64,000 bases of DNA from Octopus sinensis (Eukaryota), in NCBI RefSeq assembly GCF_006345805.1, contig NC_043019.1:930001-994000 (forward strand), read 5' to 3'. The position numbers and the translations under genes were made by a program. The notes under the pieces are model-generated. The model did not search any database, was not told the origin of the DNA, and worked only from the letters and a program-made list of their open reading frames with translations. Below are positions 1 to 57,047 of this stretch, in pieces. Positions within the stretch are counted from its first letter, which is position 1. Every line of letters begins with the position of its first letter.

Positions 1-560
1 GAATACATGAGGGCAGGCAACATTATCAGGATAGATATTAACCATATACATACGGTTATAATAAATGCTACCTTTGGTGTTCTGAGTGACATGGATTTTA
101 TTGGATGACAAACAGCAAAGTATCTATCAGCGCTCATAACTGTCAACGTAAAGACCCCAGTAAAAGAATTTATGGATACTAAAAGATAATAGAATTTACA
201 CATAAAGAATCCAAACATCCAAAATCCATTCTTAATTGTAACAATGAGTAAAGGAATACTGACTAAGAAGAGAACGTCAGCAATTGCAAGATTCAAGATA
301 TAGGTATTGGTAACAGTTTTCATTTTCGAGAACATCGTAACAACGTATATTACCAAACAATTGCCAAACAGTCCTGTAATACAGATCAGGGAGTTACTGA
401 TCATTACGGTTATATTAACAATTTCCATGAATACTCTTCTAATACTGTGTTCTGTGGCGTTTGAAAGAGAATTGTTCATGTCAGCGTATGTGTCGTTGAA
501 ATTCTCACCGAACAGGCTTTGTTCCGTGACGTGAACAGTCTCATTAAATAACGGTTCCAT
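1..560 (-). CDS. AstC-R: Class A neuropeptide GPCR, allatostatin-C / somatostatin receptor-like; N-terminus to TM4, continues beyond the left edge
   Basis: Manual minus-strand translation from ATG 560-558 is open for 186 codons: MEPLFNETVHVTEQSLFGENFNDTYADMNNSLSNATEHSIRRVFMEIVNITVMISNSLICITGLFGNCLVIYVVTMFSKMKTVTNTYILNLAIADVLFLVSIPLLIVTIKNGFWMFGFFMCKFYYLLVSINSFTGVFTLTVMSADRYFAVCHPIKSMSLRTPKVAFIITVCIWLISILIMLPALMY. It has TM1 GN, TM2 NLAIAD, W-x-FG-x-x-x-C, DRY and TM4 W/P motifs and five N-glycosylation sequons. GNxLVIYVV..FSKMxTVTNxYILNLA and MSADRY.AVCHPI are typical of AstC/SST receptors. GPCR call is very secure; the subfamily symbol is less so. Confidence 0.93.
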   Translation of the reverse strand, partial: MEPLFNETVHVTEQSLFGENFNDTYADMNNSLSNATEHSIRRVFMEIVNITVMISNSLICITGLFGNCLVIYVVTMFSKMKTVTNTYILNLAIADVLFLVSIPLLIVTIKNGFWMFGFFMCKFYYLLVSINSFTGVFTLTVMSADRYFAVCHPIKSMSLRTPKVAFIITVCIWLISILIMLPALMY

Positions 561-583
561 GTTGATATCTTATAGGAATATGT

Positions 584-607
584 CTTTGAAAAAAAAATAA
601 ACAAAAC
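584..607 (-). other. Candidate 3' splice acceptor for a 5'-UTR intron of the GPCR
   Basis: Minus strand reads ttttgtttatttttttttcaaAG|acatattcc, 23 nt upstream of the ATG. AAG is a weaker acceptor than YAG; no transcript evidence. Confidence 0.35.
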
Positions 608-1201
608 AGACTTGGTCAATAAACGTATATTTTTTTTTAAAATCTGAAGACGATGTATTTTATATATATATAAGTCTTATTTTGGCGTTTCGGGATAATC
701 GAATTTCTTTCAATTAATCATTTTTATTTCCCTTGCTGTTGTCATTTTATTTGGTAACATTGAAATATCAGTTGTAAAATATTGTTATTCGATATATATG
801 GTGTCATGTGCACGATCCTTTGAAATCAATACGAATATGTGTTTTATCCGTAAATATTTTCGATTTCGACTATTCGCCGAATTTTAGCTGTTTCTGCGTT
901 CTTCAGGGTGGATTAGAGGTTCTTTCAGTTACATTTCAACAACCTTTGAAAAAAAGAAAGAAAAAGAAAAACATAATTAGTTTTAATATCCATAATTTTT
1001 ATAATAAAATTATTTTTAAAAACATGTTCAATTTAGAAATAAAAAATATTTCATTGGCAAATTTCTCCCATTCTCTCTCACTTTTTTTTCTTCACCATCA
1101 TTATCACGACGACGACCATATTATCATCATCGACAGAATCATCATCGGCTTAATCGTCGTCGTTATTATCGTCGTCCTCTCCTGTTGATCCTCATTACTG
1201 T

Positions 1202-1584
1202 GTGGAAGCACTCCGTCGGTTACCACGACGAGGGTTCCGGTTGATCCGATCAACGAAACAGCCTGCTCGTGAAATTAACGTGTAAGTGGCTGAGCACTCC
1301 ACAGACACGTGTGCCCTTAACGTAGTTCTCGGGGATATTCAGCGTGACACAGAGAGTGACAAGGCCGGTCCTTTGAAATACAGGTACAACAGAAACAGGA
1401 AGTAAGAGTGAGAGAAAGTTGTGGTGAAAGAGTACAGCAGGGATCACCACCATCTCTGTCGGAGCGTCGTGGAGCTTTAGGTGTTTTCGCTCAATAAACA
1501 CTCACAACGCCCGGTCTGGGAATCGAAACCGCGATCCTACGACCGCGAGTCCGCTGCCCTAACCACTGGGCCATTGCGCCTCCA
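1202..1584 (-). mobile_element. tRNA-derived SINE family B, full length
   Basis: tRNA-like head GGAGGCGCAATGGCCCAGTGGTTAGGGCAGCGG...GGTTTCGATTCC; near-identical to 43428-43806; 11-bp TSD ctcattactgt at 1191-1201 and 1585-1595. Confidence 0.88.
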
Positions 1585-1683
1585 CTCATTACTGTAAATG
1601 GAAGAACATAGAGCATACACACATAGACACACAGTCATATAGGGGCGTATGTCCTTTACTGCCTCTATATATATATTTTTCAA

Positions 1684-1914
1684 GGCGGCGAGCTGGCAGA
1701 AACGTTAGCACGCCGGGAGAAATGCGTAGCCGTAGTTCGTCTGACGATACGTTCTGGGTTCAAATTCCGACGAAGTCGACTTTGCCTTTCATTCTTTCGG
1801 GGTCGATTAATTAAGTACCAGCTACGCACTGGGGTCGATGTAATCGACTTAATCCCTTTGTCTTTCCTTGTTTGTCCCCTCCGTGTTTAGCCCCTTGTGG
1901 GTAGTAAAGAAATA
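1684..1914 (+). mobile_element. tRNA-derived SINE family A monomer (central domain resembles the Meta/MESC SINE domain)
   Basis: A-box-like TGGCAGAAACGTTAG, B-box GTTCAAATTCC, central GACTTTGCCTTTCATyCTTTCGGGGTCGAT, tail GTAAAGAAATA; many copies in the window. The Meta/MESC label is from memory. Confidence 0.85.
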
Positions 1915-2092
1915 TATATGATATCAGTCTCCATATTATGTCATTCAGTTTTACACAAATTGAAATTCCGTAGCTGTGTTAGGCGTAACACACAACCAAC
2001 ATAAAACAGTTTCAATATAGTAACACGGCCATCCAGTCAAATATACCGCTGCGAATGAAGAAGCTTTTATTTCAAGCAACAGTAGTAATAAT

Positions 2093-2478
2093 GATGGCAT
2101 TCCGTCGGTTACGACGACGAGGGATCCAGTTGATGCGATCAACGGAACAGGCTGCTCGTGAAATTAACGTCTAAGTGGCTGAGCACTCCACAGACACGTG
2201 TACCCTTAACGTAGTTCTCGAGGGGATTCAGTGTGACACAGTGTGTGACAAGGCTGGCACCTTTGAAATACAGGTACAACAGAAACAGGAAGAAAGAGTG
2301 AGAGAAAGTTGTGGGGAAAGAGTACAGCAGGGATCACCACCATCCCCTTCCGGATCCTCGTAGAACTTTAGGTGTTTTCGCTCAATAAACACTCACAACG
2401 CCCAGTCTTGGAATCGAAACCGCGATCCTATGACCGCGAGTCCGCTGCCCTAAACACTGGGCCATTGTGCCTCCACAC
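2093..2478 (-). mobile_element. SINE family B, full length
   Basis: Same sequence as 1202-1584; 10-bp TSD tagtaataat at 2083-2092 and 2479-2488. Confidence 0.85.
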
Positions 2479-2603
2479 TAGTAATAATACACCACAAACA
2501 AAATGATAGACTGCTGAGGAATAGTATAAGAAATTATAACAAGGACATCGTAAGTAACTATAAACATCAAGATAACGTGAAACAATTCTTTTAGGAATAT
2601 CAC

Positions 2604-2909
2604 GTTGCGCAATGTCTCAATGGTTAGGGCAGCGGACTCGCGGTCGGAAGATCGCGGTTTCGATTCCCAGACCGGGTGCTGTGTATGTTTATTGAGCGAA
2701 TACACCTAAAAGCTCCACGAAGCTCCGGCAGCAGATGGTGGTGACCCCTGTTGTACCCTTTCGCCCCAACTTTCTCTCACTCTTTCTTCCTGTTTCTTGA
2801 GTAACGCTGTGATGGACTGGTGTCCTGTCCAGCTGGGGGAGGGGGACACATACGCTACAGAAACCAGGAAACCGGGCCCATGATCCTGGCTAGGCTTGAA
2901 AAGGGCGCA
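2604..2909 (+). mobile_element. SINE family B variant with an alternative 3' tail
   Basis: Shares head and body with family B, then ends AAACCGGGCCCATGA..CCTGGCTAGGCTTGAAAAGGGCGCA. Confidence 0.75.
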
Positions 2910-3452
2910 GAAGAAATGTTGGTTTGAAAAAAAAAACCTTTTGAGTAGCTAAATTCGAAGGCTACCTGTACGATTCATACCCCTATATCCCGCAACCCCA
3001 AATTTAAACGCTACTACTTAATGCCCTCTTTGCTTCGACATCTACTCTTCCTCCTCCTCTCCAAACAAAAAAGAGAACTATTCACGTTCTCTCGGATTTT
3101 ATAATTCTAATCACGTTAACAACACGCGACAATCTCTGTTAGTATAATGGTTCTAAAATGACTAAAAACAACAATTGTAGTATTGCATTAGTCCAGTGGT
3201 AAAGCGCCAATTATGTTTACACGATATGTGGCTTCGTGTACCCCCACGGGTATACGTCTAGCAAAGCAATACTTCGTTTATTCCAGCAACCGAGAGGTGA
3301 ATCATCAGCAACGAAAAAATTGTATAGAAAAAGTGAAAAAAAAATTCAGTAAAAGGTAATTTATGATATACGTACTGGGATTCATATTTTACGACCGAGC
3401 AAAATCGATTAAGACAATCAGATATGAACAAAGTTGACCTTTTTTACTTTCG

Positions 3453-3498
3453 AATATATATATATATATATATATATATAAGTATGTATGTATGTATG

Positions 3499-3581
<83 letters not shown>

Positions 3582-3600
3582 CATATACATATATATATAC

Positions 3601-3632
<32 letters not shown>

Positions 3633-3652
3633 GTATATACATATATACATAT
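3453..3652. repeat. (TA)n / (TATG)n microsatellite
   Basis: Directly visible; source of the YI-repeat ORFs. Confidence 0.95.
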
Positions 3653-4309
3653 AAAAATTAACTTAATGCAGTAAGATATTTTGCCAAGCTGGAAATTACA
3701 GTTCTTCATTTCGGCTTTACATTATACAGACAATACAACCGCTGAGATCGATTAAACCTGATTTATCCTTTTCTAATTTTTGTGACCGGGAGCTATCTAG
3801 GAGATGATTAGTGACAGCGTTGCAAAACGTATTAAAACTTCTTTGTTGTCTTTATCCATCTGAAATTTTATCCGACACACCGCCAATACTTCACCGTTAC
3901 GGCCCCGTTTTTCTGTTTTAAATGCCGTCTCTTGTTACAATTCTTTTCAAGGCTATGCCAAATTTTAACCACTGCCAAGAATTTCTACTCATTTTCCTGT
4001 CATGCTACATTTATCCCTTTTTTCCGACCACACTACCAATCCTTCGTATTCTCTAGCCCAAAGATTTATGGTTGCTGCCATCTGCTGTCACTATTTTGCT
4101 TTCCAATTTTCTCACCCAGAAAAAATTACGTAATGGTTTTTACGCTAATAATAAATAACACCATTAGTGTTTACTACCAGTTTTTTTTTAATTTGAAACA
4201 AAATTACTGAAGGAGGGAGAATAACTAGCGGGAGAAGAGAAAAAAGTAAATAACTGAATATTATTTAAAAAAAAATTTTTTGAGCTGTAAATAAATTGGA
4301 AATAAAATC

Positions 4310-4530
4310 TTTTATCTTCTACTTGTTTCCGTCATTTGACTGCGACCATGCTGGGACACAGACTTTATTTTTTTCCTTTATTTGAAGCCTGATACTTATT
4401 CTATCGAAATCTTTTGCCGAACCGCTAACTTACGGCCAGTTGTCAAGTAGAGGTGGGGGGACAAACCCAGACACAAAGACTTACACACACACGTACATAT
4501 ATACATATACATACATACATTTATAATATG
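4310..4530 (-). mobile_element. SINE family C, 3' part
   Basis: gtttccgtcatttgactgcgaccatgctgg...ttttgccgaaccgctaa matches the 3' half of family C. Confidence 0.6.
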
Positions 4531-5762
4531 GCCCACTAGGAAAAACATCCCTGGTCTAGTGGATTATATCGATCTCAGTGATTGACTGGTACATATTTAA
4601 TCGACCCCAAAAAGATGAAACAAATTTCGACTTTGGTGGCATTTCAACTCAGAACGTGAAGACGGACGGAATGCCGCTCATTTCTTTTGTCCAGCGTGCT
4701 AACGATTCTGCAAGCTCACCGCCTTTATCTACTAAATCATTATTGGGAACACTGCAAAGTCAGCACAAGTTCGTTGTCGCCTTTATCCATTTGAAATTTT
4801 TTCTGCACCAATAGTTTTTCTCGTGATTACATGCTACGATTTCCTTGGAAACCTTTGCATGTATTGCTAGCTTCCTTGGAATTTAACTTTAAGCTTATTA
4901 TTTCATGGATTAATAATTTTTATCTAATCTCTTACAGATTTTGCACCATAAAGTTTTATTTTTACACTACACAAGATTTGCTCTCAGCTCTTTTGCAGTC
5001 CGATTATTAGATTCTACCAAATTCTTTTTTCATTCATGTTGATAATTCCATAACTGAATATTATTTCATCTCTAACTCTGTCTCATCAATATTCTGTCAC
5101 ACTTTTATTATGACATTCTTTCCTTAGCACTTTCGTTTAAATACATCTATTCTTAATCCTTTAACCCATTTATATTAACCATACAGCATACGTATCAACG
5201 ACCAGGGTGGAGCTCTATGTTCTCACTCGACATTCTAGAAATTATCTCCAAGTTTCTCCTTCAAGTTACAATTTCCAGTCTATAATATAATATTAGCAAG
5301 AAATAATATTTCTACAGAGAAATAGATTATTTTAACACAAATATGTCTATTATAAAATTCAATATCATGCAATGTTCATTGAAGTAAACGAAGATACCAA
5401 CATCGATTCGTCTGCTGGCATTGCTAGCGAGAACCAAATTTTAAAAATGAGTCGACAAATACGTAAAAGATGATGCGGAAAAAAGGTACCAAAATAATTC
5501 TATTTTTACCTGTGAAATTTACTAGGGAGTCATTGAAAGATACAGTCACCCTACTCTGTCTTTGTATGGCAGAAAATCAATAAAACACACATTTAATGAT
5601 ACGCTCATGAAATTGTTTATACTATTTATACCTGTTTATACTATCTATACTTATACTATTTTTGTGATGTATTAATGTAATTATTAATCACATTTTTTTA
5701 ATTGAGTCTTATCAATCCGTATTATTATCAACTTCGTCCTCAAGGCTTCTTCCTATGCGGTT

Positions 5763-5993
5763 GACGGCGAGCTGGCAGAATCGTTAGCACGCCGGGCGAA
5801 ATGCTTAACGGTATTTAGATTGCCGCAACGTTCTGAGTTCAAATTCCGCCGAGGTCGACTTTGCCTTTCATCCTTTCGGGATCGATTAAATAAGTACCAG
5901 TTACGCACTGGGGTCGATACAATCGACTTAATCCGTTTGTATGTCCTTGTTTGTCCCCTCTATGTTTAGCCCCTTGTGGGCAATAAAGAAATA
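5763..5993 (+). mobile_element. SINE family A monomer
   Basis: Full head-to-tail match to the family A consensus. Confidence 0.85.
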
Positions 5994-6280
5994 GGTTATA
6001 ATTAGCCATTCAGTTTCATGTTCCAAGATCCAGTTTCTTAACCACAGCCACAGATCATACATCCAATATCTGCCATTTATTGCACGTTTATTATAGTCTT
6101 TTGTGACCGATATATCGACTAGGAGGCAACGTACTCTACGTTGAACCTTCAGGATAATATCTGCTGAATTAACCTTAATCTTCTGTGTGAATATTGGCTC
6201 ATCTCAGATTATAGCCACTTTGACATTCTCGAAGCATTTTTTCTTCTGTATACTGAAGCCAGTTCTCTTATATACGTTCA

Positions 6281-6444
6281 TCACGACCACGACCACCACC
6301 ACGACAACCACCACGACCCCCACCCCCCACCACGACCACCACCAACAACAAAAACAACATCAAGACCACCAGCACCATCCTTATCATCATTATAATCATC
6401 ATCATAATCATCATCGTTTTCATTATAATCCCTCCACATCTTCC

Positions 6445-6482
<38 letters not shown>
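6281..6482. repeat. Compound trinucleotide microsatellite (CAC/CAA/CAT, then TTA)
   Basis: Directly visible; the (TTA)n part is also the LINE tail. Confidence 0.9.
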
Positions 6483-6484
<2 letters not shown>

Positions 6485-7640
6485 TATACACACAACAGAT
6501 TAGACTGTTGGAAAAGAAAAAAAACAAGTAATCGCAGATGCCAAGAACCCTCCTAAGTGTCCTAGCTGTCCCTAAAAACACTGTTTTCTGGAGCTGTACT
6601 GAATTGGGTTTTATGACTATTTCCTCTATCCATCTGTTCAAATCTTTATACCTATTTCCTCTATTCATCCTTTCAAATACATCTGTTCAACTGTTTAGTT
6701 CCTAATGCAACTATAACTATCGGTATACATTTTACCACCACTTTCCATAGTCTCTGTAATTCAGTGTCTAGGTCCTGGTACTTTGCCATTTCTTCTATGC
6801 CCCTCATATTGGTTTGCTTCATCATTTGGGACTGAAAAGTCAATTATCTTGCCCTTTCTATTCTCTTTATCTACTACTATTAAGTCGGGTCTTCTGGTTT
6901 CTAATACTCTGTCAGTCTGAATGTTTAAGACACACGTCATCTTATGTTTTTTCAGTACCTACTAGGTTCATGCTCGTACCATTTATCAATATGTTCAAAT
7001 CCTGGCTTTCAACATGGCTACAAGTAAATTACTCTCCTTGGGTTGTCATGTCTTTTCTTGTATTCTTTCTGTGTCAGCATGCTATATTTACTTAATATAT
7101 GAGTAACGCTTTCCTGTTTTAATGTGCATAACCTACATACTTGTTTCTTTGTCTATCTTGGCTTTTATCCAATTAGTCCTTAAAGTTTGATCTTGTGCTG
7201 CTACTAACACACTTTCTGTCTCCTTTTTCAACCTTCCTTTCTGCAACCGTAACCAATGTCTCACTACTACAATTTGCTGCAACAATCGTTGGGAATCTAT
7301 CATGCAGCGCCTTCTCCTACCAGTCGGATAACTTTTGTTCTTATTTCCCGTTACTAAATTTGTTTCATTGTTTTTGCTTCCCTGTGTCTTGCTGTAATTC
7401 TAGCAGCTTTTTATAACTTTCTTCACTATTACCTACACAGGAATCTATATCTACTCCAGCTACCTCCATGCAGTCTTCTCCTGAGATTAACCCTCTTCCG
7501 GCTTCCTTTCTAGGTAAGTATAATCATGTCACTCCTGCCTTTGGGTGAAGTCTTCCATTCATATTGAATTCCTTCCTAGTCATTCTGTCTAGCTTTGCTA
7601 ATTCAGTTTTTGTACTATCTGCAAAAGCTATTCAATAAAA
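6445..7640 (-). mobile_element. Decayed, 5'-truncated non-LTR retrotransposon with restriction-like endonuclease (R4/Dong-like)
   Basis: Minus-strand remnants with stops and frameshifts: LDRMTRKEFNMNGRLHPKAGVT*LYLPRKEAGRGL, KKETESVLVAAQDQTLRTNWIKAKID, RPDLIVVDKENRKGKIIDFSVP (PD-(D/E)xK), LQKTVFLGTARTLRRVLG; ends in an (AAT)n tail. Confidence 0.85.
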
Positions 7641-9651
7641 ATTGTTTAAGGATGTTGAATGAAACACCCATGTTTCCAGAGTTGAGTTATTCAAATCCCC
7701 AAAGAATTCCTCTCAATACATGTGTATGATACTCCCCCAACTACTTCTGCTGGTGATCAGAGATGCACATACTGTCAGCCACAAAAGGACATGCTATACT
7801 GGTTAAGATCAAACAACTGACATGCAAATCTGTGGTATTAAGCAGAAAATTTGCTACACCAAGGCAAAATATTTACGCGATAACACATCAAATCAGTTAC
7901 GATTTGAAGCATTTATAGCCACTGTTGTTTGGTAGAATCGTTAGTACATCGAGCGGAATGCTTAGCAGCATATCGTATGTCTCTTTAGGTTTTAAGTTCA
8001 GATATTTTCAAGGTCGGTGTTGGCTTTCATCTTCCTGGTTCGCGAAGTATCAGTTAAGATTAGGGGTTGACGTAATTGACTAACAATCTGCTACTCTCCC
8101 ACCCACCCACCACAAAAACATTCAGGCCTTGTGCCAAAATTTGAAGACTGCTGGTCTTCCGTAAACACAACTCTAGATTGTGCGTTCGCTGGTGAGGCGG
8201 CTTTCGCCCAGACTTGTACTCCGGAGGGAACCTCTTAGGTGCATCCATGGTCATTCGTGACCGTTAGAGTCAATATATGTATATTGACCTTAACCTTATA
8301 TGTTTAATTATCCCCGCTTAGCGCACTACCCCCGTAATATGTATGCAGGTATATCGATACAAACACGATGCAATGGTTAAATTTCCGTCATTCTACAATT
8401 TTAATCTCCTGCATGCGTATTCTCTTGCTCGTTTTTGATTTGTCGACTACACAGTATGGTTGGGTCAGTTGGGTACCGTTTGTGAGAAAAACAGCATCAT
8501 GATGCAATTCACTCAGCCAGAAATTTGAAAGGATTATTATTATTCTAGTTGTATAAAATATGTTGGTTTCAACTTTTCGTGTCAAGGCTAAGAACTTTGG
8601 GACGTGGGGAGGTAAGTCGATTACTTGAAACCCTGTGTTCAACTGCCTCGTATTTTATTGACAGAGAAAGGATGACAGTCAAATGTCGATCTCGGCATAA
8701 TTTGAACTCAAAATATAAAACCGGTCGAAAAGCCGCTGAACGTTTTGCCCGCTGTGCTAGCGACTCTGCCGCCATAATAGTCTTAAATATATTGCCTGCT
8801 TACACTCTGCAACCCATTTTAACTCTGTACCTTAAGTACATTCAGTGATTTTTTGTTGCGCTTGGCATTTTTTTTTTTCTGCTATCAATTTTATGGGAAA
8901 TTCTATAGCAGCGTTGTCCAACATTCTACGGATCCAAGCAATCCACTGTTACTTGAAAGAAAAAAGTAATCAAATGGAAAATAATAGAAAATATAATTAT
9001 GGAACGAGGAAAAAAGTTGCTAAACATACAGCTAAAAATAACCCTATTCTTCAAACGATAATTGAGCTATTATGGATAATTTGGGAAAAGATAGCAGCAA
9101 AAACATCATAGGACAACTTAGAAATAATTATACAGAACTAGCAGTTATCTACAAATAAAACAGATATATCTTCAAACCTCACATATAGTAACATCCACAT
9201 TCTCAAATATGGCAACACATTCTGTCGTATACCGGAACATAGCAAATTCCAAAACAATTTCTATCTCGGTTCTGAAATGGCTTGTGCTCAATTTTTGAAT
9301 AACAGCAATTAATTATGGAAAACATACAAAAGTTTACTGAAATATTACATAAAGAAGTGAGTAAAAGAACATTTGAAAGACTACGTGTACATAAAATGGA
9401 AATGAAAACGCTGCAAATGTGAATACGGTAACGTTTTTATGGAGATGAAAAAAATCCACTTCGTAATGCATAATTTATTAAGAAATAAAAGGTACCAAAA
9501 TATTAAACAAATCTTATCGTGTACGAAATTCAGAGATGTTCTTTACGTGCAGCTTAAGTAACAAACAAGTTTTTTTATGTCGTGGTCTGCATTGCGTAGC
9601 TAAGAAATTTAAGAAATATCATCATGAGTATCAAAGTAACTTGTCGAGCTA

Positions 9652-9849
9652 ATATACTTAACAAAAGGAGGCCCAATAGATATACTTAACATAAAGAGTC
9701 CAATCGATATACTTAACATAAAGAGGCCCAATAGATATACTTAATATAAAGTGGCCCAATAGATATACTTAACATAAAGAGGCCCAATAGATATACTTAA
9801 TATAAAGTGGCCCAATAGATATACTTAACATAAAGAGGCCCAGTAGATG
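9652..9849. repeat. 28-bp minisatellite, about 7 copies
   Basis: Unit GAGGCCCAATAGATATACTTAACATAAA repeated head-to-tail without spacers. Confidence 0.9.
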
Positions 9850-10122
9850 AAATTACATCCAAATCTCCGTCAACTCCAACTCTACTGTATTAAATAATGT
9901 AATCAGACTTAAACTATATCGTAGATTTCCCCATAACTATGGAATGACAGTAGCTGGAAGGCCTTTAATATCTTTAATATCTCAAAACGTCACGCAACAT
10001 GCACACACGCGTAAACATCTTGCTAATAATTAACGTCATTCCATATGGCCTGTGGTCTTTTGTGAAAAGGAAGAATACGTAATCACTACCGTCTTGGATT
10101 ATCAAAAGAATATTGTTGTATC

Positions 10123-10561
10123 GGATCTTTTCGGTTTGAACGACAGGTTTTAACATAATTTCTAGGTAACTAAAAAAATTTTAAACTTAGTATACTGGTA
10201 GAATGTGTTTATAAAAAAAAATTTTCTCTTGGATTTATTGAGAAAATTCTATAGTTTGTAAGATATTTATTGTTGTTTTTTTCTTCAATTTCTGCAATTT
10301 CAACCAATCAATGACGTCTATTGAGGTAAAAAAAACATTCTGTGCCGTATGAATATGTCCCTCGTTTAAGAAACAGATTGGGTTTCTTTACATTTGTGAA
10401 GAAAAAAAAGATACCCTTCCACCACCCCTAACCCTAACCCTAACTAACCCTAACCCTAAATGAGATTGAAATGCAATAGATCGATACGAGGGTCATAATT
10501 ATGGGTGACAATTTCATATGACACCACAAGAAAAAAACTGCCGTTCAAACCGAAAAGATCC
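10123..10561. mobile_element. MITE / non-autonomous DNA transposon with ~24-bp TIRs and internal (CCCTAA)n
   Basis: GGATCTTTTCGGTTTGAACGACAG at 10123 and CTGCCGTTCAAACCGAAAAGATCC ending at 10561; no clear TSD. Confidence 0.8.
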
Positions 10562-10845
10562 GCTGTAACTAATGAAAATAGATACAAATATTCTAGCGTT
10601 CCTTATATCAATTCGCTGAAAGTTATTGGTTAGTATTCCATACAGATTGACACGAGGTATAAAGAAGAAACGTACCACTAGCGATGGTTTAAGTTAGCAA
10701 CATCTTTCAATAAAGTTTGAAAATGTCTCTAAATTTAAGTTCTGAGTAATTCCATAAACATTTCGAAAATCTTTTTTTATTCCGGTTGAAGTACTTCACT
10801 TGAAAATGTGCTTCAAACTTATTCAATACAGCAGTGCTTCGGAAT

Positions 10846-10893
10846 ATACATACATACATACATACATACATACATACATACTACATACATACA

Positions 10894-10959
<66 letters not shown>

Positions 10960-11040
10960 TTATATATATATATATATTTATATATATATGTGTGTATTTA
11001 TATATGTATATATATATGTATATTATATATATATACATAT

Positions 11041-11096
<56 letters not shown>

Positions 11097-11186
11097 TATA
11101 TATATAAATATACATATATATATATATATATAAATACATATATATATATATAAATATACATATATATATATAAATATACATATATA

Positions 11187-11225
<39 letters not shown>

Positions 11226-11258
11226 TATATGTGTGTATATATACATGTGTGTGTGTAT
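10846..11258. repeat. (TACA)n then (TA)n microsatellite
   Basis: Directly visible. Confidence 0.95.
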
Positions 11259-11576: not shown

Positions 11577-11614
<38 letters not shown>

Positions 11615-11916
11615 ATACTACTACAACTACTATTACTACAACTACTACTACTACTACTACTACTACTGCTGCTACTACTACTACTACTACTACTACTAAT
11701 AATAATAATAATAATTATAATACAACTCCGATAACTACTACAACTACTACTACTATTACTTCTACTACTACAACTATTACTAAACTAGTACTACTATTAC
11801 TACTACTAAGCTACTACTACTACTAGAGATTGCAATAATACTACTATACTACTATTACTGCTACTACTACTAAGCTGCTGCTATTACTACTACTACTACT
11901 ACTAAACTACTACTAT

Positions 11917-11953
<37 letters not shown>
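11577..11953. repeat. Imperfect (CTA)n microsatellite
   Basis: Directly visible. Confidence 0.95.
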
Positions 11954-13079: not shown

Positions 13080-13479
13080 ATCATCATTGTTCGACTGTGG
13101 TCGAGACAATGGAATTTACTATGCTACGCCAGACTTCACGGTCCATCATAGCATTACGGAGGTCCTGTTGCTGGATGCCTGTATCCCTGGAGATTACATC
13201 AGGGTAGGAGAGTGTGCGCCCTCTGGTATCGCGAGCTGATGGCTTCCAGAGGAGAAGAGTAGAACTTACCTCGTTTTCAGCCCTACAACAATGTCCAGCA
13301 AACTGGATTCTTCTACCTTTCACAAGAGATGATACAGGTGGTGATTTCCCATATATTTGTACTTTGGTTGGATGACGCTTCCACGAGAGATTTTGAGCTC
13401 TCATAAGGAGGCGAGAGTAAGTTCCATTCAACCGCCTCTCAAGCTTCTTTGATAACGTCCAGGTTTCTGAGCCATATTT
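13080..13479 (-). mobile_element. 5'-truncated RTE-clade LINE (ORF C-terminus) nested in an old SINE-A copy
   Basis: KYGSETWTLSKKLERRLNGTYSRLLMRAQNLSWKRHPTK...RRIQFAGHCCRA...WKP...DREVWRSIV, with a TGA-repeat-like tail. SINE-A head at 13480-13525 and SINE-A remainder at ~12930-13075 flank it in the same orientation. Confidence 0.85.
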
Positions 13480-13750
13480 CTGAGCAATCTATCCGACGTG
13501 CTAAAAACTCTGCCAGCTCGCCGTCTTCCGAAAGGAACACAGCGTAGGGCTAAAATGTAGCTATACGTCAGGGTTATTAATGTAGTGGTTTAGATGGATT
13601 TGTACGTTGCAGCTAGCAAGCTGTAAAATGTAGCTGTCATTCGATTGTGGCAAAATAATAGGTAACACTACGATGACTGTTGAAGTTATAATGAACAACT
13701 TTGTAACGCGTAAACGTGGCAAAAAGAAACATCGAAAAGAAAGGAATATT

Positions 13751-14111: not shown

Positions 14112-14917
14112 AAGGAAATATTCTCTTGTTATATGGACTATGGTTGGATGTAGGAAAAATCCGAAACGAAGGGCTGACCTTTAAGTGACCACGTAAAAAG
14201 CTCTTAGGTCAAGCGTTTTCCATTCACCATCCAGTGTGGAGATGCAAATACACAGAGATTTGAGAAGTGGTTGACAAGCAACAAGCGAGTGGATTCAGTT
14301 TCGAATCACAGGCAAATTCAAGCGACGTCTTTACAACAGTAAACTACCGGAGCAATCAGCTAAACAAGCTGTATAATTTACGTGCTGTCACTGACATATA
14401 TGAAAGTAGAGCTAGACGGACATTTTGAAACCATGATATGACGACTTAGTTAAAAATCGGTTGCACTACCACGTAAAACAAAGCACACATAAGGGTTTCG
14501 TGGACCAAAAAAATCTAGCAAATACTTAGAAATCAATGAAAAATATCGAAAATCTAATAAACACGCAAGACAACCAGTTAAATAATATATTGGACGTGAG
14601 ATAAACATTGAATATTTCTTTGTAGTGTAAATAATTTCAATGAAAATAACACCAGCAACAATAACGATACGACTACTGATACATGGCTGGTCATCAAAAC
14701 ATGATTATAAATAGAACAGGAAATTAAAAACAATCGTTACTGGACAACGAAAACAAGATTACTTTCTAATAACGACAATGAAAGATGAAGTACTGAAAGT
14801 GGAAATGTGTCATTGGATGTTGTCTACAGCAACGTTTGCTAGCAATAGATGTTCCGTATGACGGTCTCTCAATTATGCTAAACCACAAAAGTTATATTGA
14901 CTGGATATTATGGCTTT

Positions 14918-15650
14918 GTAAGATGAGGACAACGCAAGTCCTAACATCTCCGAGCTGGCAGAAACGTTAGCACGCCGGGCGAAATGCGTAGCCGTATTCC
15001 GTCTGCCGTTACGTTCTGAGTTCAAATTCCGCTGAGGTCGACTTTGCCTTTGTAAGATGAGGACAGCGTAAGTCCTAACATCTCCGAGCTGGCAGAAACG
15101 TTAGCACGCCGGGCGAAATGCGTAGCCGTATTCCGTCTGCCGTTACGTTCTGAGTTCAAATTCCGCTGAGGTCGACTTTGCCTTTGTAGATGAGGACAGT
15201 AAGTCCTAACATCTCCGAGCTGGCAGAAACGTTAGCACGCCGGGCGAAATGCGTAGCCGTATTTCGTCTGCCGTTACGTTCTGAGTTCAAATTCCGCCGA
15301 GGTCGTCTTTGCCTTTCATCCTTTCGGGGTCGATAAATTAAGTACCAGTTACGCACTGGGGTCGATGTAATCGACTTAATACATCTGTCATTGTTTGTCC
15401 CCTATATGTTTAGCCCCTTGTGGGCAATAAAGAAATAAGAAACGTTAGCGCGCCGGGCGAAATGCTTAGCGGTATTTCGTCTGCCGTTACGTTCTGAGTT
15501 CAAACTCCGCTGAGGTCGACTTTACCTTTCTTCCTCTCGGGGTCGATAAATTAAGTACCTGTTGCACACTGGGGTCGATGTAATCGACTTAATCCGTTTG
15601 TCTGTCCTTGTTTGTCCCCTCTGTGTTTGGCCCCTTGAGGGTAGTAATGA
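14918..15650 (+). mobile_element. SINE-A cluster: 134-bp flank+head unit triplicated, completed by a full copy and a second tandem copy
   Basis: Units start at 14918, 15052 and 15186; tail-to-head junction AAAGAAATAAGAAACGTTAGCG at 15430-15450. Confidence 0.88.
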
Positions 15651-17990
15651 AAAAGGGTATACTGGCAATTCTACTTTCTCGACCGTGGTAGAATATAAGA
15701 CAGATTCGATACTGGAACAATTTGAATTGAATTCACAAATTGTGACACACAGCATTCTGATAGACGTTCTCCCGCTTTAAGTATTTTAGGGTAGCTTCAC
15801 AAAACAATATTTATAATAGAGAACATACGACCAGAACAAGGTGTAATTACCCCTGTATAAAAGTTCAACTGAAGATCATTACATTAATGGACATACCTCT
15901 CCTGGAAATTGCTGGCCTTGTGCCGAAATTTGAAACCATTATATCTTCTTCATCATGGCTTTCTGGTATTAAGTGGCAACAACAAAACGGATCTGAGAAC
16001 TATCGACAGGTTAATATACGTTATTCAAAGGCCCTGTTGAGTTATATTTCCAGAAAATAAGTAGTGAAGGAGAATTATGAATATCATCATTGTTATCCCT
16101 TATTTTCCATTATTTATTTCTTGCTTCGTTTCCGTGTGGGTATCCGCCATTGAATGTTGCATTCATTGACAGAGCTCTGTGAAAGAATGTGTATAGCAGC
16201 AGATATTAAATTTTTTTTTACAATTTGTTGAACTGTTTTTTTCGCCCCAAACAAACATTTTCCATATAAATGAAGTTAATTTTTGTACTATTTTGATTGA
16301 TAATTTCAGTTATTAGAGCACTCTTAGCTACTTCAGATTTCGAAGAGCATATTTGAAATTGTACGAAGAGAAATGATGATGTCACTGATGGTCGTTTATC
16401 TTTATCCATCATCTCTCCACTTAAATAGACTCCATCCGTTTCGAAGTTGTGCTTTGTCCTACAGAGAACGTCTAATGATATATCATTTAAAAGTCTTTTT
16501 GAAATTGATGTGCTTTGGGTATTTAATTGTTGCTTTTAGCAAGTCTTTCTTGTTGGTTTTGTTTCAAAGTGGCTGCCGTGCCCTCGGTGGCAGCAGTGGC
16601 AACTTGTTGTCAGGTATTGCATCAGCCAAAAAGCTGCTGGGGAAGCATGAAGCAAGAAGAATAGCAGATGTATACACGCAACTGACGAGACGGCGGTGAA
16701 CAATGCTAGAATACAATTATGATGACAGATAAAACTTTTCACTACAGGAATTTTAAGCGAATATATGCATCGACACGCAAAGCATGAAGTGATGACAATC
16801 AATCTCTTTTCATGACCTCATCATGTTCCATTTGTTAATATGGTTAGAGAAATGCTCCTGAGCAGAGGCGAGGTGCTATGTTGTAAGGTGTACGATGTGT
16901 AACAAAAGTCTTTTTTTTTTTACTTAATTAAACGAAGTACGGAATGTGGCGTTAGATTTTAATGAAGTTCGATTTTTGCTGAATAACCTTTTGAATTTTC
17001 ATTGTCAGATACTGGCTGAATTTTGAATATGACACATAACATTGGTTCATAAATTTTAAATTTGATGCTACGTTAATTAGTCACATTTCAGCGTCTGAGG
17101 GCCTATCTGTTACAGAAGCATATTTTAGCATCTTAATATTCTTGTATAATAGGTATTAGCGGAAGATATTTTCCGGCTAATAATAGAGGTGATTGCTGTT
17201 GCTAAATTGCCCAAGGATATATTTGTACAAGCTCTACAAAGTCTTGTGAAGTGGAAGAGGCGAATAAATAAACAAGTGTGTGAATGATGCTAATATGAAA
17301 ACAACCATTAAACAGTGAGTAGTTTCATGGTCAGGATAGAAATTAAATTAATTTTTAATTAAGATTTCAGTGTGGTACTAACGTAGGAAACCAAAGCTGA
17401 CAAGACTTTAAGAAATAAAGATAATCGGATTTTTATAATGAATTCGAGATCGAAAAAATAAATATGAATAATTTAGAATCTTACGTATTAAGACACGATA
17501 GAAATAATATGCTTAATATAATTGACTCTTCGGGCAGTTCTACAGTTCTATTTTAGATTGTGTTGCACATTACATTGTTTTGTATCATATTAGCAAAGAT
17601 TGATCTTCTTCTTTTAATGCTGGGATCCTCAATTGTGATGTAATTCTAGAGAATAAAATGCTAATTGTAATTTTTATCCTTAAGCCAGTTATTCCTACCG
17701 ACTTGATGTCAGTGTGTTACGAGTTATGGTCATCTCGTTGTTTGGAAGATTCAGACAACGTGTCATTCTCCATCCCTTTTTTGGCAAAATATAATAGTGA
17801 CGAAAGATTTGGAGCTAATTTGTTTCGTAATTTTAGGCAGTCGTGGGAAAGTGGAGAAACAAAGAGACTGGCATACGTGCTTAGCCTTAAGAACGTTGCG
17901 ATCGAGTATATATAGATTTAAAAGCGCTCCGACCATGATTGTCGCAGCTGTGAGTGTTATGTAATGAATTATTCCATTTTACGTTTGTAT

Positions 17991-28408: not shown

Positions 28409-28427
28409 AATAATAATAATAATAATA

Positions 28428-28459
<32 letters not shown>

Positions 28460-28537
28460 AAGAATGATAATGATAATAATAATAATGATAATAATAATAA
28501 TGATGATAATAATAATGATGATAATAATAATAATAAT

Positions 28538-28580
<43 letters not shown>

Positions 28581-28625
28581 TTAATAATATTAATAAATAA
28601 ATAAATAAATAAATAAATAAATATA
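28409..28625. repeat. (AAT)n/(GAT)n then (AAAT)n microsatellite
   Basis: Directly visible. Confidence 0.95.
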
Positions 28626-31406: not shown

Positions 31407-32210
31407 GGCGGTGAGCTGGCTGAAACGTTAGCACGCCGGGCGAAATGCTTATTGGTATTTCAACTGCCGTTACGTTCTGAGTTAAAATTCCGCCGAGGTC
31501 AACTTTGCCTTTCATCCTTTCGGAGTCGATAAATTAAGTACCAGTTACGCATTGGGTTCGATATAATCGACTTAATCCGTTTGTCTGTCCTTGTTTGTCC
31601 CCTCTATGTTTAGCCCCTTGTGAGCAAGAAAGAAATAAGAAACGTTAGCGCGCCGGTTGAAGTGCTTGTCGGTATTTCGCCTATCTTTAAATTCTGAGAT
31701 CAAATTTCGCCAAGGTCTGCTTTGCCTTTCATCCTTTCGGGGTCGATAAATTAAGTACCAGTTATGTACTGGGTTCGATCTAATCGACTGGCCCCCACCC
31801 CCAGAATTTCAGACTTGTGTCTGGAGTAGAAAAGAATATTTTTGTCTAGTATAAGGCGGGGATCTGGCAGAAACGTTAGCGTGCCGGTCGAAGTGCTTAT
31901 CAGTATTTCGTTTGTCTTTATATTCCGAGTTCAAATTTCGCCGAGGTTCACTTTGCCTTTTATCCCTTCGGGGTCGATAAATTAAGTACTAGTTGCGTAC
32001 TGGGGTCGACCTAATCAACTGGCTACTTCCCCCAAAATTTCGGGCCTTGTGCCTAAAGTAGAAAAGAATATTTTATCTAGTATTTCGCGGAGGTCGACTT
32101 CGCCTTTTATTCTTTTGAGTCCGATGATATAAGTAGAAGTTGCACATCGGGGTTGATGTAATCGATTTAACGCCCTCCCCAAAATTGCTGGCCGTATACC
32201 AAAATTTCAA
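31407..32210 (+). mobile_element. SINE-A cluster (dimer plus monomer with alternative tail, plus inverted fragment)
   Basis: Three plus-strand units; flank AATATTTTATCTAGTAT repeated at ~31388, ~31836 and ~32067. Confidence 0.8.
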
Positions 32211-36642: not shown

Positions 36643-37429
36643 TAAGAGACACCTTTAAAAAATTTCCTCAGCTTCCTTGAGCAAATTTCAGGAAAATGTT
36701 CCCGAATATTCTCATACAAATAATAAACTGAAATCTCCATATCTGATGTTGACCCACGAACAGATGCTCTTGTCTTCATTCGTTTACAAAGAAGCAATTA
36801 AGCAAATAACACTTATCTTGTAAAATTTCTTCTAACAATTAGAAGTAGTTTAAATATTCAGCAGATTACAGGTTTCCGATTTGTTAAAATTAGGTAAGTT
36901 GAAACGCTGGAAAATTCTTTATTATTACATAATTCTTTCTTAATTTATTAGAGAAAAGTAAATGAGATCTTCAACAACAGTTTGCGAAACTGCTTCAAAA
37001 CTACACGTTTCGAAAGTAATTTGGTGACGACTTGAAATAATTTCAAGGAGTTTGGAGAAATTTAACATAATTGAGTTACTCTCAATCACTGAATTCCCTT
37101 CGTCCAATTCAACACACAAAAAAAAAAAATGGACACAATTTTGTAAAATGCTTATGAACAAGGAAGAAAATAAATAAATAAATAAATAAAGCAATTAATT
37201 AATCAATAAGTAGAAGCAAATCACTTCACTTTTGTTACAGCACATTCTCTTCATTTCTCAACCTGACCACTTCCACGGCAACCAAATCGAAACTGTTTAA
37301 CCATCAACACCATCGTCTGCGCTTCCCGGATCGTCTTCAGCATCTACTGATGCTACATCCAATCTTAGTACCATACGCATCACCAAGTATAAGACTTCGC
37401 CACCTCAATCCCACACTATATCTGCTACC

Positions 37430-38397
37430 TATTTCTTTACTACCCACAAGGGGCTAAACATAGAGGGGACAAACAAGGACAGACACACGAATTAAGTCGA
37501 TTACATCGACCACAGTGCGTAACTGGTACTTATTTAATCGACCCCGAAAGGATGAAAGGCAAAGTCGACCTCGGCGGAATTTGAACTCAGAACGTAGCGG
37601 CAGACGAAATATACATATTCCTCTACTACCCACAAGGGGCTAAACATAGATGGGACAAACAAGGACAGACACACGGATTAAGTCGATTACATCGACCCCA
37701 GTGCGTAACTGGTACTTATTTAATCGACCCCGAAAGGATGAAAGGCAAAGTCAACCTCGGCGGAATTTGAACTCAGAACGTAATGGCAGATAAAATACCT
37801 ATTTCTTTACAACCCACAAGGGGCTAAACATAGAGGGGAAAAACAAGGACAGACACACGAATTACGTCGATTACATCGACCACAGTGCGTAACTGGTACT
37901 TATTTAATCGACCCCGAAAGGATGAAAGGCAAAGTCAACCTCGGCGGAATTTGAACTCAGAACGTAATGGCAGATAAAATACCTATTTCTTACAACCCAC
38001 AAGGGGCTAAACATAGAGGGGAAAAACAAGGACAGACACACGAATTACGTCGATTACATCGACCACAGTGCGTAACTGGTACTTATTTAATCGACCCCGA
38101 AAGGATGAAAGGCAAAGTCAACCTCGGCGGAATTTGAACTCAGAACGTAATGGCAGATAAAATACCTATTTCTTTACAACCCACAAGGGGCTAAACATAG
38201 AGGGGAAAAACAAGGACAGACACACGAATTACGTCGATTACATCGACCACAGTGCGTAACTGGTACTTACTTAATCGACCCCGAAAAGATGAAAGGCAAG
38301 GTCGACCTCGGCGGAATTTGAACGCAGAACATAACGGCAGAAATTATACGGCTACGCATTTAGCCCGGCGCACTAACGTTTCTGCCAGCTCGCCGCC
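37430..38397 (-). mobile_element. SINE-A pentamer inside a single ~21-bp TSD
   Basis: Five ~184-bp units, only the first (38397 end) with the head; TSD tcccacact(a/t)tatctgctacc at 37409-37429 and 38399-38419. Confidence 0.9.
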
Positions 38398-40427: not shown

Positions 40428-41304
40428 TACAAGTTGCAGTGAATAAACTGTGGTCTAAATTAAGCAAAATTATTCCAACAGATATATTTACCAAAATTAC
40501 GTAATAATATCTTGAAATACTAAAGATTAAATTTATTCAATAAAATCGCTATTCGCTTATACCACGGCTTCCAGACGACTTCGGAATCTCCTTAATACCC
40601 TTCTGGACGGTCTCTATGTTTAATTTGCTGAATACTGCCATTACCTTTGCCTTCAGTTCATCTATGGGGTTACAAGGAGTTTTGTTGGTTTCTCGCTCAA
40701 CTGCGCCCCACATATAATAATCAAGGGGTTTGCAGTCTGGTGAGTAAGGTGGACAGATGTAAGGGGTAATGTGGTTGCAGAAATTCTCTGACAGTCATAA
40801 CTGGGTTCTCCTGCTTGTGTGGCATGGTGCAGAGCCCTGCTACCAGACATAGAGTCTTCCAGCAGCCACCCTCTGGAGCAGCACCCAGAGCAGCATTACC
40901 TCATCCAGGTACTTGATCTAGGCCTCCGCGTTGAGTCTGAGGCCGTGTGGGAAAATGGATGGTGACATAACGTCGCCATCACTAGTGGTCCCTGCAACCA
41001 CCATGATGTTGACTAGATGTTTGACTGTTTTCAGTCTCGGTACGTGTCGTCAGATTGCACTGTCCTCAGATTCGCAGCAAGACATTCTGAAGTGTTCGTG
41101 TTGGAGCTTCCGGTGCAAATACCAAGCAGCGCATGTCGTTTCCAAATTTCTGGCAAAGTGAATAGTGTCATGATGCTGCGTTTCTCACAGACGGTGTCCA
41201 ACAGACCCTACTGTACTGTGTAGTCGATAGAATCGAAAACAAGCAATGTGCACGCACGAAATTAAAAATATAATATGGTGACAGTTTACCCATCACAGCA
41301 GGTA
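40428..41304 (-). mobile_element. Internally deleted Tc1/mariner-superfamily transposon (maT/DD37D-like)
   Basis: N-terminus MTLFTLPEIWKRHA..., then directly KHLVNIMVVAGTTSDGDVMSPSIFPHGLRLNAE...VW*QGSAPCHTS...PPYSPDCKPLDYYMWGAVERETN...RFRSRLEAVV; degenerate TIR-like ends sharing TAAACTGT. Confidence 0.8.
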
Positions 41305-43137: not shown

Positions 43138-43427
43138 AAATATATATATATATATACATAATGTATTCAATATATATTAATATATTAATACAATATCTTA
43201 TTGTATTTTACTATACACTTTTACCGTTTCCAATTTTAGCGCTCCCTTTTCAATATTTGTTTTCTCATAAACTAATGCGTGTGAAGGTTTCTCTTTAACC
43301 CGGAGTAATTGTGGAAATATCTGATGAGAAACAAGTTTATATTGATCAAATTTCGAAATCATGTGATGAGTGTTTACCGAACAACTTCGTCCTCTGAGTT
43401 TATCTCGCCATAAATACAAGTTGTTGT

Positions 43428-43806
43428 GGAGGCGCAATGGCCCAGTGGTTAGGGCAGCGGACTTGCGGTCGTAGGATCGCGGTTTCGATTCCCAGACCGG
43501 GCGTTGTGAGTGTTTATTGAGCGAAAACACCTAAAACTCAACGAGGCTCCGGCAGGGGATGGTGGTGATCCCTGCTGTACTCTTTCACCACAACTTTTTC
43601 TCACTCTTACTTCCTGTTTCTGTTGTACCTGTATTTCAAAGGGGCCGGCCTTGTCACTCTCTGTGTCACGCTGAATATCCCCGAGATAAGGGTACACGTG
43701 TCTGTGGAGTGCTCAGCCACTTACACGTTAATTTCACGAGCAGGCTGTTCCGTTGATCGGATCAACCGGAACCCTCGTCGTCGGAACCGACGGAGTGCTT
43801 CCATCC
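43428..43806 (+). mobile_element. SINE family B, full length
   Basis: Consensus match; TSD acaagttgt at 43416-43424 and 43807-43815. Confidence 0.88.
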
Positions 43807-56633: not shown

Positions 56634-57047
56634 GGCGGCGAGTTGGCAGAAACGTTAGCACGCCGGGCAAAATGCATAGCGGTATTTCGTCTGCCATTAC
56701 GTTCTGAGTTCAAATTACGCCGAGGACGACTTTGCCTTTCATCCTTTCGGGGTCGATTAAATAAGTACCAGTTTCGCACTGGGGTTGATGTAACCGACTT
56801 AATCCGTTTGTCTGTCCTTGTTTGTCCTCTCTGTGTTTAGCCCCTTGTGGGTAGTAAAGAAATAAGTATTTCGTCTGCCGTTACGTTCTGAGTTCAAATT
56901 CCGCCGAGGTCGACTTTGCTTTTCATCCTTTCGGGGTCGATATATTAAGTACCAGTTTCGCACTGGGGTCGACGTAATCGACTTAATCCGTTTGTCTGTC
57001 TTTGTTTGCCCCTCTATGTTTATCCCCTTGTGGGCAATAAAGAAATA
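56634..57047 (+). mobile_element. SINE-A dimer
   Basis: Junction GTAAAGAAATAAGTATTTCG at ~56854-56873. Confidence 0.88.

What the first reader, a model, noticed from the sequence alone, without database searches (positions are those of the whole stretch)
1..560. GPCR missed by the ORF track: allatostatin-C/somatostatin-type receptor
Seen: an uninterrupted 186-codon minus-strand frame with canonical class A TM1-TM4 motifs and five N-glycosylation sequons; the track shows only its antisense shadow (307..534). Known: AstC receptors are the protostome relatives of somatostatin/opioid-branch receptors. Inference: this is a cephalopod AstC receptor paralogue with no intron up to TM4, and the 63 kb of repeats is its regulatory or 5'-intron territory.
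Basis: partly seen in the sequence, partly recalled or inferred. Interest (0 to 1): 0.7.

Follow-up and report, generated by a model that had tools for sequence, protein, structure and literature searches.

The report
Octopus allatostatin-C receptor 1 gene start
The left edge of the window holds the first 186 codons of the Octopus sinensis allatostatin-C receptor 1 gene, a real and intact neuropeptide receptor that is already annotated and whose identical O. vulgaris protein has already been cloned and matched to its peptide, so it is correct but not new.

Summary
Window 560..3 (minus strand) is an open 186-codon frame starting at an ATG, with a stop four codons upstream. It carries five N-X-S/T sequons and the class A motifs N1.50, D2.50, C3.25, DRY and W4.50 (Pfam 7tm_1, E = 1.1e-35). 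The ORF list misses it only because the frame runs off the window edge.

- The window is Octopus sinensis CM016881.1:930001-994000.
- The frame continues to the left as a single-exon 1233-bp CDS encoding 410 aa.
- That protein is identical to O. vulgaris OvAstCR1 (GenBank PV164564). In a 2026 preprint OvAstCR1 was placed in the AstC-receptor clade, found to have an intronless CDS, detected in all tissues tested, and activated by cyclic OvAstC with EC50 28 nM.
- My own tree groups it with protostome AstC receptors and excludes somatostatin (SSTR), opioid and NPBWR1 receptors: 99/100 bootstraps on the full 7TM region, 90/100 on TM1-TM4 alone.
- Position 3.32 is Val. It is Asp in every SSTR, opioid and NPBWR1 sequence sampled.
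- dN/dS among octopus orthologues is about 0.1, so it is not a pseudogene.

The claim that the 63 kb of repeats is regulatory or 5'-intron territory remains untested.

Verdict: already known, low interest.

The parts
1..560 (-). Codons 1-186 (plus 2 bases of codon 187) of the single-exon allatostatin-C receptor 1 (AstCR1) CDS: extracellular N-terminus, TM1-TM4 and the start of ECL2. The remaining 224 codons lie to the left of the window.
   Evidence: 186/186 aa identical to OvAstCR1. The full 410-aa ORF is in L003 10001-11233, whose bases 1-10560 are the exact reverse complement of window 1-10560.
558..560 (-). Start codon ATG
   Evidence: Same start as the O. vulgaris transcript ORF and as the gene calls in four genomes.
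570..572 (-). In-frame stop codon four codons upstream of the ATG. It fixes the ATG at 560 as the first possible start in this exon.
412..545 (-). Stretch holding the five N-X-S/T sequons (N6, N22, N29, N34, N49) of the extracellular N-terminus
   Evidence: regex on the translation. Actual glycosylation is inferred, not shown.
360..362 (-). N67 = N1.50 (GN motif of TM1)
276..278 (-). D95 = D2.50 (LAIAD motif of TM2)
198..200 (-). C121 = C3.25, the TM3 partner of the ECL2 disulfide
   Evidence: The ECL2 partner C199 lies outside the window, in L003.
177..179 (-). V128 at position 3.32. It is not Asp, unlike SSTR, opioid and NPBWR1 receptors.
   Evidence: Asp in 26/26 SSTR, opioid, NPBWR1 and invertebrate-deuterostome SSTR-like sequences; V, T, F or Y in 33/33 protostome AstC-receptor-type sequences.
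120..128 (-). D145-R146-Y147, the DRY motif at the cytoplasmic end of TM3
42..44 (-). W173 = W4.50 of TM4
561..1207 (-). Unique, non-repeated sequence just upstream of the ATG; presumed 5' UTR and proximal promoter (inference only)
   Evidence: No second copy inside the window. Collinear with O. bimaculoides at 78-96% per 100 nt, not clearly above the local background of 83-94%. No conservation with Argonauta.
307..534 (+). Antisense shadow ORF (75 aa, TTG start); not a gene
   Evidence: No Pfam family. It lies wholly inside the conserved minus-strand CDS.

Best explanation
Window 1-560 (minus strand) is the 5' part of the Octopus sinensis allatostatin-C receptor 1 gene (AstCR1), a class A, somatostatin/opioid-branch neuropeptide GPCR. 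NCBI's automatic name for it is 'somatostatin receptor type 2-like'. The window encodes the glycosylatable extracellular N-terminus and TM1-TM4. The same exon continues leftwards through TM5-TM7 to a stop codon, giving 410 aa in total.

The protein is identical to O. vulgaris OvAstCR1. OvAstCR1 responds to the disulfide-cyclised 14-mer OvAstC (AVITACYFQAVSCY) at nanomolar concentration. It is about 100-fold more sensitive than its paralogue OvAstCR2.

Shown: sequence identity, an intact single-exon CDS, clade membership, purifying selection, and (published) ligand activation and detection in every tissue tested.

Inferred: native Gi/o coupling (the assay used a chimeric Gqi protein), N-glycosylation, and a promoter/5' UTR in the unique 561-1207 stretch.
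For: The frame is open and Pfam 7tm_1 matches at E = 1.1e-35. The full-length protein from L003 matches 7tm_1 over positions 1-260 of 260, E = 1.1e-61.

All 186 residues, and 382 of 385 CDS bases, match O. vulgaris c22802_g3_i1 / PV164564; none of the three differences changes the protein. PV164564 is OvAstCR1: 410 aa, intronless CDS, in the AstC-receptor clade of a 197-sequence IQ-TREE phylogeny. Its EC50 for cyclic OvAstC is 2.8e-8 M, against 3.5e-6 M for OvAstCR2. RT-PCR gave bands in all tissues tested.

The window equals O. sinensis CM016881.1 with 0 mismatches over 10,560 nt, and the gene there translates to the 410-aa protein P0289. Orthologous single-exon ORFs exist in O. vulgaris, O. 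bimaculoides (96% aa), a further unnamed Octopus-like species (Logan contigs) and Argonauta hians (84% aa). dN/dS is 0.10-0.14 in the comparisons between distinct octopus species.

In my NJ tree the protein groups with receptors named AstC-R from insects and crustaceans and with an Aplysia receptor, excluding vertebrate SSTR, opioid and NPBWR1 in 99/100 bootstraps (full 7TM) and 90/100 (TM1-TM4 only). It is sister to the cephalopod AstCR2 clade in 90/100. Position 3.32 is Val, as in AstC-receptor-type sequences, not Asp.
Against: The ligand assay was done on the O. vulgaris clone, not on O. sinensis material, although the proteins are identical. It comes from a preprint and used a promiscuous chimeric G protein in HEK cells.

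Automated database names call the gene 'somatostatin receptor type 2-like', and the best solved-structure matches are SSTR2 and the mu-opioid receptor. That partly reflects the absence of any AstC-receptor structure among the matches listed.

My tree is a distance tree with few outgroups. The Aplysia anchor P0179 carries the same NCBI name as the deorphanised receptor, but the tool did not show its accession.
Confidence: 0.95

Rival explanations
1. It is a true somatostatin-type or opioid-type receptor (as the automatic NCBI name implies) whose natural ligand is a somatostatin-like peptide, not AstC.
For: The best PDB matches are SSTR2 (2e-38), the mu-opioid receptor, and SSTR5 and SSTR1. Sources name the relatives 'somatostatin receptor type 2-like'.
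Against: In the tree the protein is separated from vertebrate SSTR, opioid and NPBWR1 and from invertebrate-deuterostome SSTR-like sequences in 99/100 bootstraps. It lacks Asp3.32, which is present in all 26 sampled sequences of those groups. It is activated by octopus AstC at 28 nM. The published phylogeny places it among AstC receptors.
Confidence: 0.03
2. It is a truncated or decaying copy (pseudogene) whose TM5-TM7 are missing or broken beyond the window edge.
For: The window alone cannot show TM5-TM7.
Against: L003 continues the exact window sequence and carries an uninterrupted 410-codon ORF ending in one stop. It matches the full 7tm_1 profile, 1-260 of 260. dN/dS is 0.10-0.14 between distinct octopus species. 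Transcripts were amplified and sequenced in O. vulgaris.
Confidence: 0.01
3. It is the other cephalopod paralogue (AstCR2, the low-potency receptor) rather than AstCR1.
For: Both paralogues share the TM1-TM4 motifs. The earlier paper labelled this sequence 'AstCR X2', which invites confusion.
Against: The window protein is 100% identical to PV164564, which is OvAstCR1, and only 50% identical to OvAstCR2. The two fall in separate cephalopod subclades.
Confidence: 0.01

Closest known systems
Octopus vulgaris OvAstCR1 (GenBank PV164564; gene model OctVul6B022141P1), Pieroni et al. 2026 (PMC12919962 and bioRxiv 10.64898/2026.02.18.706622)
   Same: The protein is identical over all 410 aa: P0289 is encoded in both the O. 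sinensis and O. vulgaris assemblies. The window part matches 186/186 aa. Both have a single-exon CDS of 1233 bp.
   Different: The species differs (O. sinensis here). 3 of the first 385 CDS bases differ from the O. vulgaris transcript, without changing the protein. Upstream non-coding DNA is 92-97% identical.
Octopus vulgaris OvAstCR2 (PV164563), the paralogue
   Same: Same clade. It shares Val at 3.32, the KKKS/RVT motif in ICL3 and an intronless CDS.
   Different: Only 50% identical. It is 443 aa long, on another chromosome, and about 100-fold less sensitive to OvAstC.
Aplysia californica AstC-R (XP_005095139.1; Jiang et al. 2022, PMC8786951) and arthropod AstC receptors
   Same: Same protostome clade in my tree. 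No Asp at 3.32. Activated by a disulfide-bridged AstC with six residues between the cysteines.
   Different: About 51% identity to the Aplysia-type sequence P0179 and 43-49% to arthropod ones. Residue 3.32 is F, Y or T in those groups and V in cephalopods. Drosophila AstC receptors have introns (paper's statement).
Vertebrate somatostatin receptors (SSTR1-5) and opioid receptors
   Same: Closest solved structures. They share the class A motifs, and the paper reports SSTR-like ICL3 phosphorylation motifs (KKKS, xxVT) in the octopus receptors. Most human SSTR genes are also intronless (paper's statement).
   Different: They form separate clades. Asp3.32 is present in them and absent here. Their ligands differ.

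Membership tests
Class A (rhodopsin-like) GPCR, Pfam PF00001 7tm_1 | Significant match to the 7tm_1 profile above its gathering score | tested here: met
   Window fragment: 123.9 bits against a cut-off of 30.5, E = 1.1e-35, profile positions 1-123. Full protein from L003: 209 bits, profile positions 1-260 of 260.
Class A (rhodopsin-like) GPCR, Pfam PF00001 7tm_1 | Landmark residues N1.50, D2.50, C3.25, DRY and W4.50 within TM1-TM4 | tested here: met
   N67, D95, C121, D145-R146-Y147 and W173.
Class A (rhodopsin-like) GPCR, Pfam PF00001 7tm_1 | Intact TM5-TM7 with the CWxP and NPxxY motifs | tested here: met
   These lie outside the window but on the same exon in L003. P0289 contains CWLPY and NPLLY, and the ORF has a single terminal stop.
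Allatostatin-C receptor (protostome AstC-R) family | Phylogenetic grouping with characterised or named AstC receptors, excluding SSTR, opioid, NPBWR and KISS1R-type receptors | tested here: met
   NJ tree of 69 sequences rooted on an amphioxus KISS1R-like sequence: 99/100 bootstraps (full 7TM) and 90/100 (TM1-TM4 only). The published IQ-TREE analysis of the identical protein agrees. Galanin/AstA and MCH receptors were not in my own sample.
Allatostatin-C receptor (protostome AstC-R) family | Absence of the Asp3.32 that marks SSTR, opioid and NPBWR receptors (an empirical discriminator derived here, not a curated rule) | tested here: met
   Val128. Asp in 0 of 33 protostome AstC-receptor-type sequences and in 26 of 26 sequences of the SSTR, opioid, NPBWR1 and deuterostome SSTR-like groups.
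Allatostatin-C receptor (protostome AstC-R) family | Activation by the species' own disulfide-bridged AstC peptide | not testable with these tools
   Reported for the identical O. vulgaris protein: EC50 2.8e-8 M with cyclic peptide and 1.6e-7 M with linear peptide, in HEK293G5A cells with a chimeric Gqi protein.
Vertebrate-type somatostatin receptor (SSTR) | Grouping inside the SSTR clade and Asp3.32 in TM3 | tested here: not met
   Excluded from the SSTR clade in 99/100 bootstraps. Val instead of Asp at 3.32.

The most novel reading that the evidence does not exclude
The receptor's transcript may start at one or more non-coding 5' exons somewhere in the repeat-rich 63 kb upstream, making that stretch a long 5' intron. 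In that case the SINE insertions 0.65-3 kb upstream of the ATG, which postdate the split from O. bimaculoides, could have changed AstCR1 regulation in the O. vulgaris/O. sinensis lineage. The evidence here neither shows nor excludes this.
Probability: 0.2. Interest if true: 0.2.

Novelty: already known. Interest (0 to 1): 0.1.

Why it matters
It matters little as a discovery. The gene is called in the public O. sinensis, O. vulgaris and O. bimaculoides assemblies. The identical O. vulgaris protein has been cloned, placed phylogenetically, profiled by RT-PCR across tissues and matched to its peptide.

The result is useful for the scan in three ways. First, the first-stage reader can recognise a GPCR subfamily correctly from raw sequence. 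Second, the ORF track drops genes cut by a window edge. Third, automatic 'somatostatin receptor type 2-like' names in molluscs stand for AstC receptors.

The one small new point is that Val/Thr/Phe/Tyr versus Asp at position 3.32 cleanly separates the protostome AstC-receptor-type sequences from the SSTR/opioid/NPBWR1 sequences sampled here.

Tried and rejected
1. The first homologue search with the 186-aa fragment gave no octopus hit, only relatives up to 64% identical and mammalian NPBWR1 names. This was a word-index limitation. An alignment query then found the 96% and 84% orthologues.

2. Cluster look-ups of the ten best 50%-identity cluster representatives gave almost no names.

3. The first 385 nt of the Trinity transcript printed in the paper's table do not map to the window. 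They are the reverse-complemented 3' UTR plus C-terminus, so they say nothing about the 5' UTR. The table truncates the transcript before its 5' end.

4. Two candidate splice acceptors upstream of the ATG were considered: AG at 585-584 and CAG at 646-644. Neither AG is conserved in O. bimaculoides, which has AAAC and TCAC, so I rejected them as evidence for a 5' intron.

5. The Logan contigs L005-L008 are collinear with the genome and break at microsatellites at both ends. I could not tell whether they derive from RNA or DNA, so they give no evidence on splicing or expression.

6. Footprinting against Argonauta found only the CDS and dispersed repeats, with no conserved upstream block.

7. Ten of the longest non-repetitive ORFs elsewhere in the window gave no significant Pfam match. 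No Rfam family and no tRNA were found.

8. The bacterial promoter/terminator scan was not used, because it does not apply to an animal genome.

Full report
**Observation.** On the minus strand, window 560..3 is an uninterrupted 186-codon frame beginning with ATG (MEPLFNETVH...). A stop lies four codons upstream at 572-570, so this ATG is the first possible start in the exon. The frame is open to the window edge.
- N-X-S/T sequons are at residues 6, 22, 29, 34 and 49.
- The class A landmarks are N67, D95, C121, D145-R146-Y147 and W173.
- Pfam 7tm_1 matches residues 66-186 to the first 123 of 260 profile positions, E = 1.1e-35.
- The ORF tool lists only the plus-strand 75-aa ORF 307..534, because by its own description it omits ORFs that run off an end. 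That shadow ORF matches no family.

**Identity.** A full-text search of supplementary tables found the exact peptide. All 186 residues equal the start of 'AstCR X2', transcript c22802_g3_i1, GenBank PV164564, in Table S2 of Pieroni et al. 2026 (PMC12919962). The first 385 CDS bases differ at three positions, none of which changes the protein.

A 2026 preprint by the same group (bioRxiv 10.64898/2026.02.18.706622) renames PV164564 as OvAstCR1 and reports the following:
- It is 410 aa long and corresponds to gene model OctVul6B022141P1.
- It sits in the AstC-receptor clade of a 197-sequence IQ-TREE phylogeny.
- Its CDS is intronless, on chromosome 23; the figure legend says 24.
- RT-PCR gave bands in all tissues tested, low and variable in the anterior salivary gland.
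- The cyclic peptide AVITACYFQAVSCY activates it with EC50 2.8e-8 M, about 100-fold more potently than it activates the paralogue OvAstCR2.

**Source of the window and the missing half.** An alignment-based homologue search returned P0175 (96% identity, O. bimaculoides) and P0191 (84%, Argonauta hians). The cluster of P0175 also holds P0289, which is identical to OvAstCR1. P0289 is encoded in both O. sinensis GCA_006345805.1 (CM016881.1) and O. vulgaris GCA_951406725.2 (OX597836.1).

The O. sinensis locus L003 equals the reverse complement of window 1-10560 with zero mismatches. The window is therefore CM016881.1:930001-994000. In L003 the CDS runs on without interruption to a stop (1233 bp, 410 aa) and matches the full 7tm_1 profile, E = 1.1e-61.

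The orthologues in O. vulgaris, O. bimaculoides, a further unnamed Octopus-like species (Logan contigs) and Argonauta are likewise single ORFs of 409-410 codons. dN/dS is 0.10-0.14 between distinct octopus species, which indicates purifying selection.

**Independent subfamily test.** I built a neighbour-joining tree from 69 sequences taken from the searches. Anchors were named by their sources:
- AstC receptor 2 of Arctopsyche, Procambarus and Musca, and an Aplysia 'SSTR2-like' protein;
- Dipodomys SSTR4, catfish mu-opioid receptor and mammalian NPBWR1;
- hemichordate and amphioxus SSTR-like sequences, with an amphioxus KISS1R-like sequence as root.

The octopus protein falls with the protostome AstC-receptor set, excluding vertebrate SSTR, opioid and NPBWR1, in 99/100 bootstraps on the full 7TM region. 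Using only the columns the window encodes, support is 90/100. It is sister to the cephalopod AstCR2 clade in 90/100.

A residue inside the window also discriminates. Position 3.32 is Val128 (window 177-179). It is Asp in all 26 SSTR, opioid, NPBWR1 and deuterostome SSTR-like sequences sampled, and never Asp in the 33 protostome AstC-receptor-type sequences.

The best solved structures are SSTR2, the mu-opioid receptor and SSTR5/1, as expected for the sister families. No structure named as an AstC receptor appears among the 60 matches listed.

**Mechanism.**
- Shown: a class A GPCR with an intact single exon, under purifying selection, and identical to a protein that responds to cyclic AstC at nanomolar concentration.
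- Inferred: native Gi/o coupling (the assay used a chimeric Gqi protein; SSTR and insect AstC receptors are Gi-coupled by established knowledge), N-glycosylation of the N-terminus, and a neuromodulatory role.

**The 63 kb upstream.** No other gene is called within 10 kb on either side in the O. sinensis, O. vulgaris, O. bimaculoides or Argonauta loci. The upstream 15 kb is collinear with O. bimaculoides.

The stretch 561-1207 is unique within the window. Its conservation, 78-96% per 100 nt, is not clearly above background. It is not conserved in Argonauta.

Beyond it lie SINE-like blocks that are absent from O. bimaculoides, tandem arrays of a 184-nt unit, and long microsatellites including about 2 kb of (AT)n. 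In all, 34% of the window has a second copy inside the window. Ten of the longest non-repetitive ORFs gave no significant Pfam match, and there is no Rfam family or tRNA.

The two AG dinucleotides near the ATG that might be splice acceptors are not conserved in O. bimaculoides. Whether distal 5' exons exist cannot be decided without transcript data.

**Verdict.** Novelty: already known. Interest: low.

Noticed in passing
window 1208-1585, 1686-1914, 2097-2476, about 2560-3020: SINE-like repeat blocks 0.65-3 kb upstream of the AstCR1 start codon are gaps in the orthologous O. bimaculoides region but present in O. vulgaris. They were therefore inserted after the split from O. bimaculoides. Further copies lie elsewhere in the window, e.g. 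43425-43803.
   Followed up: partly
window 58237-59890, 37426-38341, 56682-57047, 14914-15652, 31638-32083: A unit of about 184 nt (134-231 nt in other arrays) forms head-to-tail arrays of up to 9 copies at 94% identity. It contains a tRNA B-box-like GAGTTCAAATTCCGC; that resemblance is judged from memory. ARAGORN and Rfam report nothing there.
   Followed up: partly
window 60305-62353: About 2 kb of degenerate (AT)n microsatellite. It brings G+C to 0.097 in the 60-62 kb bin and produces long spurious Tyr/Ile ORFs.
   Followed up: no
window 13087-13488 (-) and 40552-40794 (-): Two ORFs look, from memory only, like the C-terminal tail of a LINE ORF2 and the C-terminal end of a Tc1/mariner transposase. 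Pfam gave no match, so this is a lead, not a result.
   Followed up: partly
window 11577-11953, 28409-28596, 9652-9848, 3454-3653, 10844-11243: Further simple repeats: (TAC)n about 125 copies, (AAT)n about 63 copies, a 28-nt minisatellite of 7 copies, and two (AT)n tracts.
   Followed up: no
L001 10001-10492 (ENA ERZ26052494, unknown animal): An AstC-receptor-like relative (P0001, 64% identity to the window protein) stops matching right after AVCHPV. It has no TM4-TM7 within 3.3 kb downstream, which suggests an intron at the TM3/ICL2 boundary in that species, unlike the intronless cephalopod genes.
   Followed up: partly
bioRxiv 10.64898/2026.02.18.706622 and PMC12919962 Table S2: Naming is inconsistent in the literature. 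PV164564 is 'AstCR X2', c22802_g3_i1, in the Biology Open table but 'OvAstCR1', c220802_g3_i1, in the preprint. The preprint's text and its figure legend swap chromosomes 23 and 24.
   Followed up: yes
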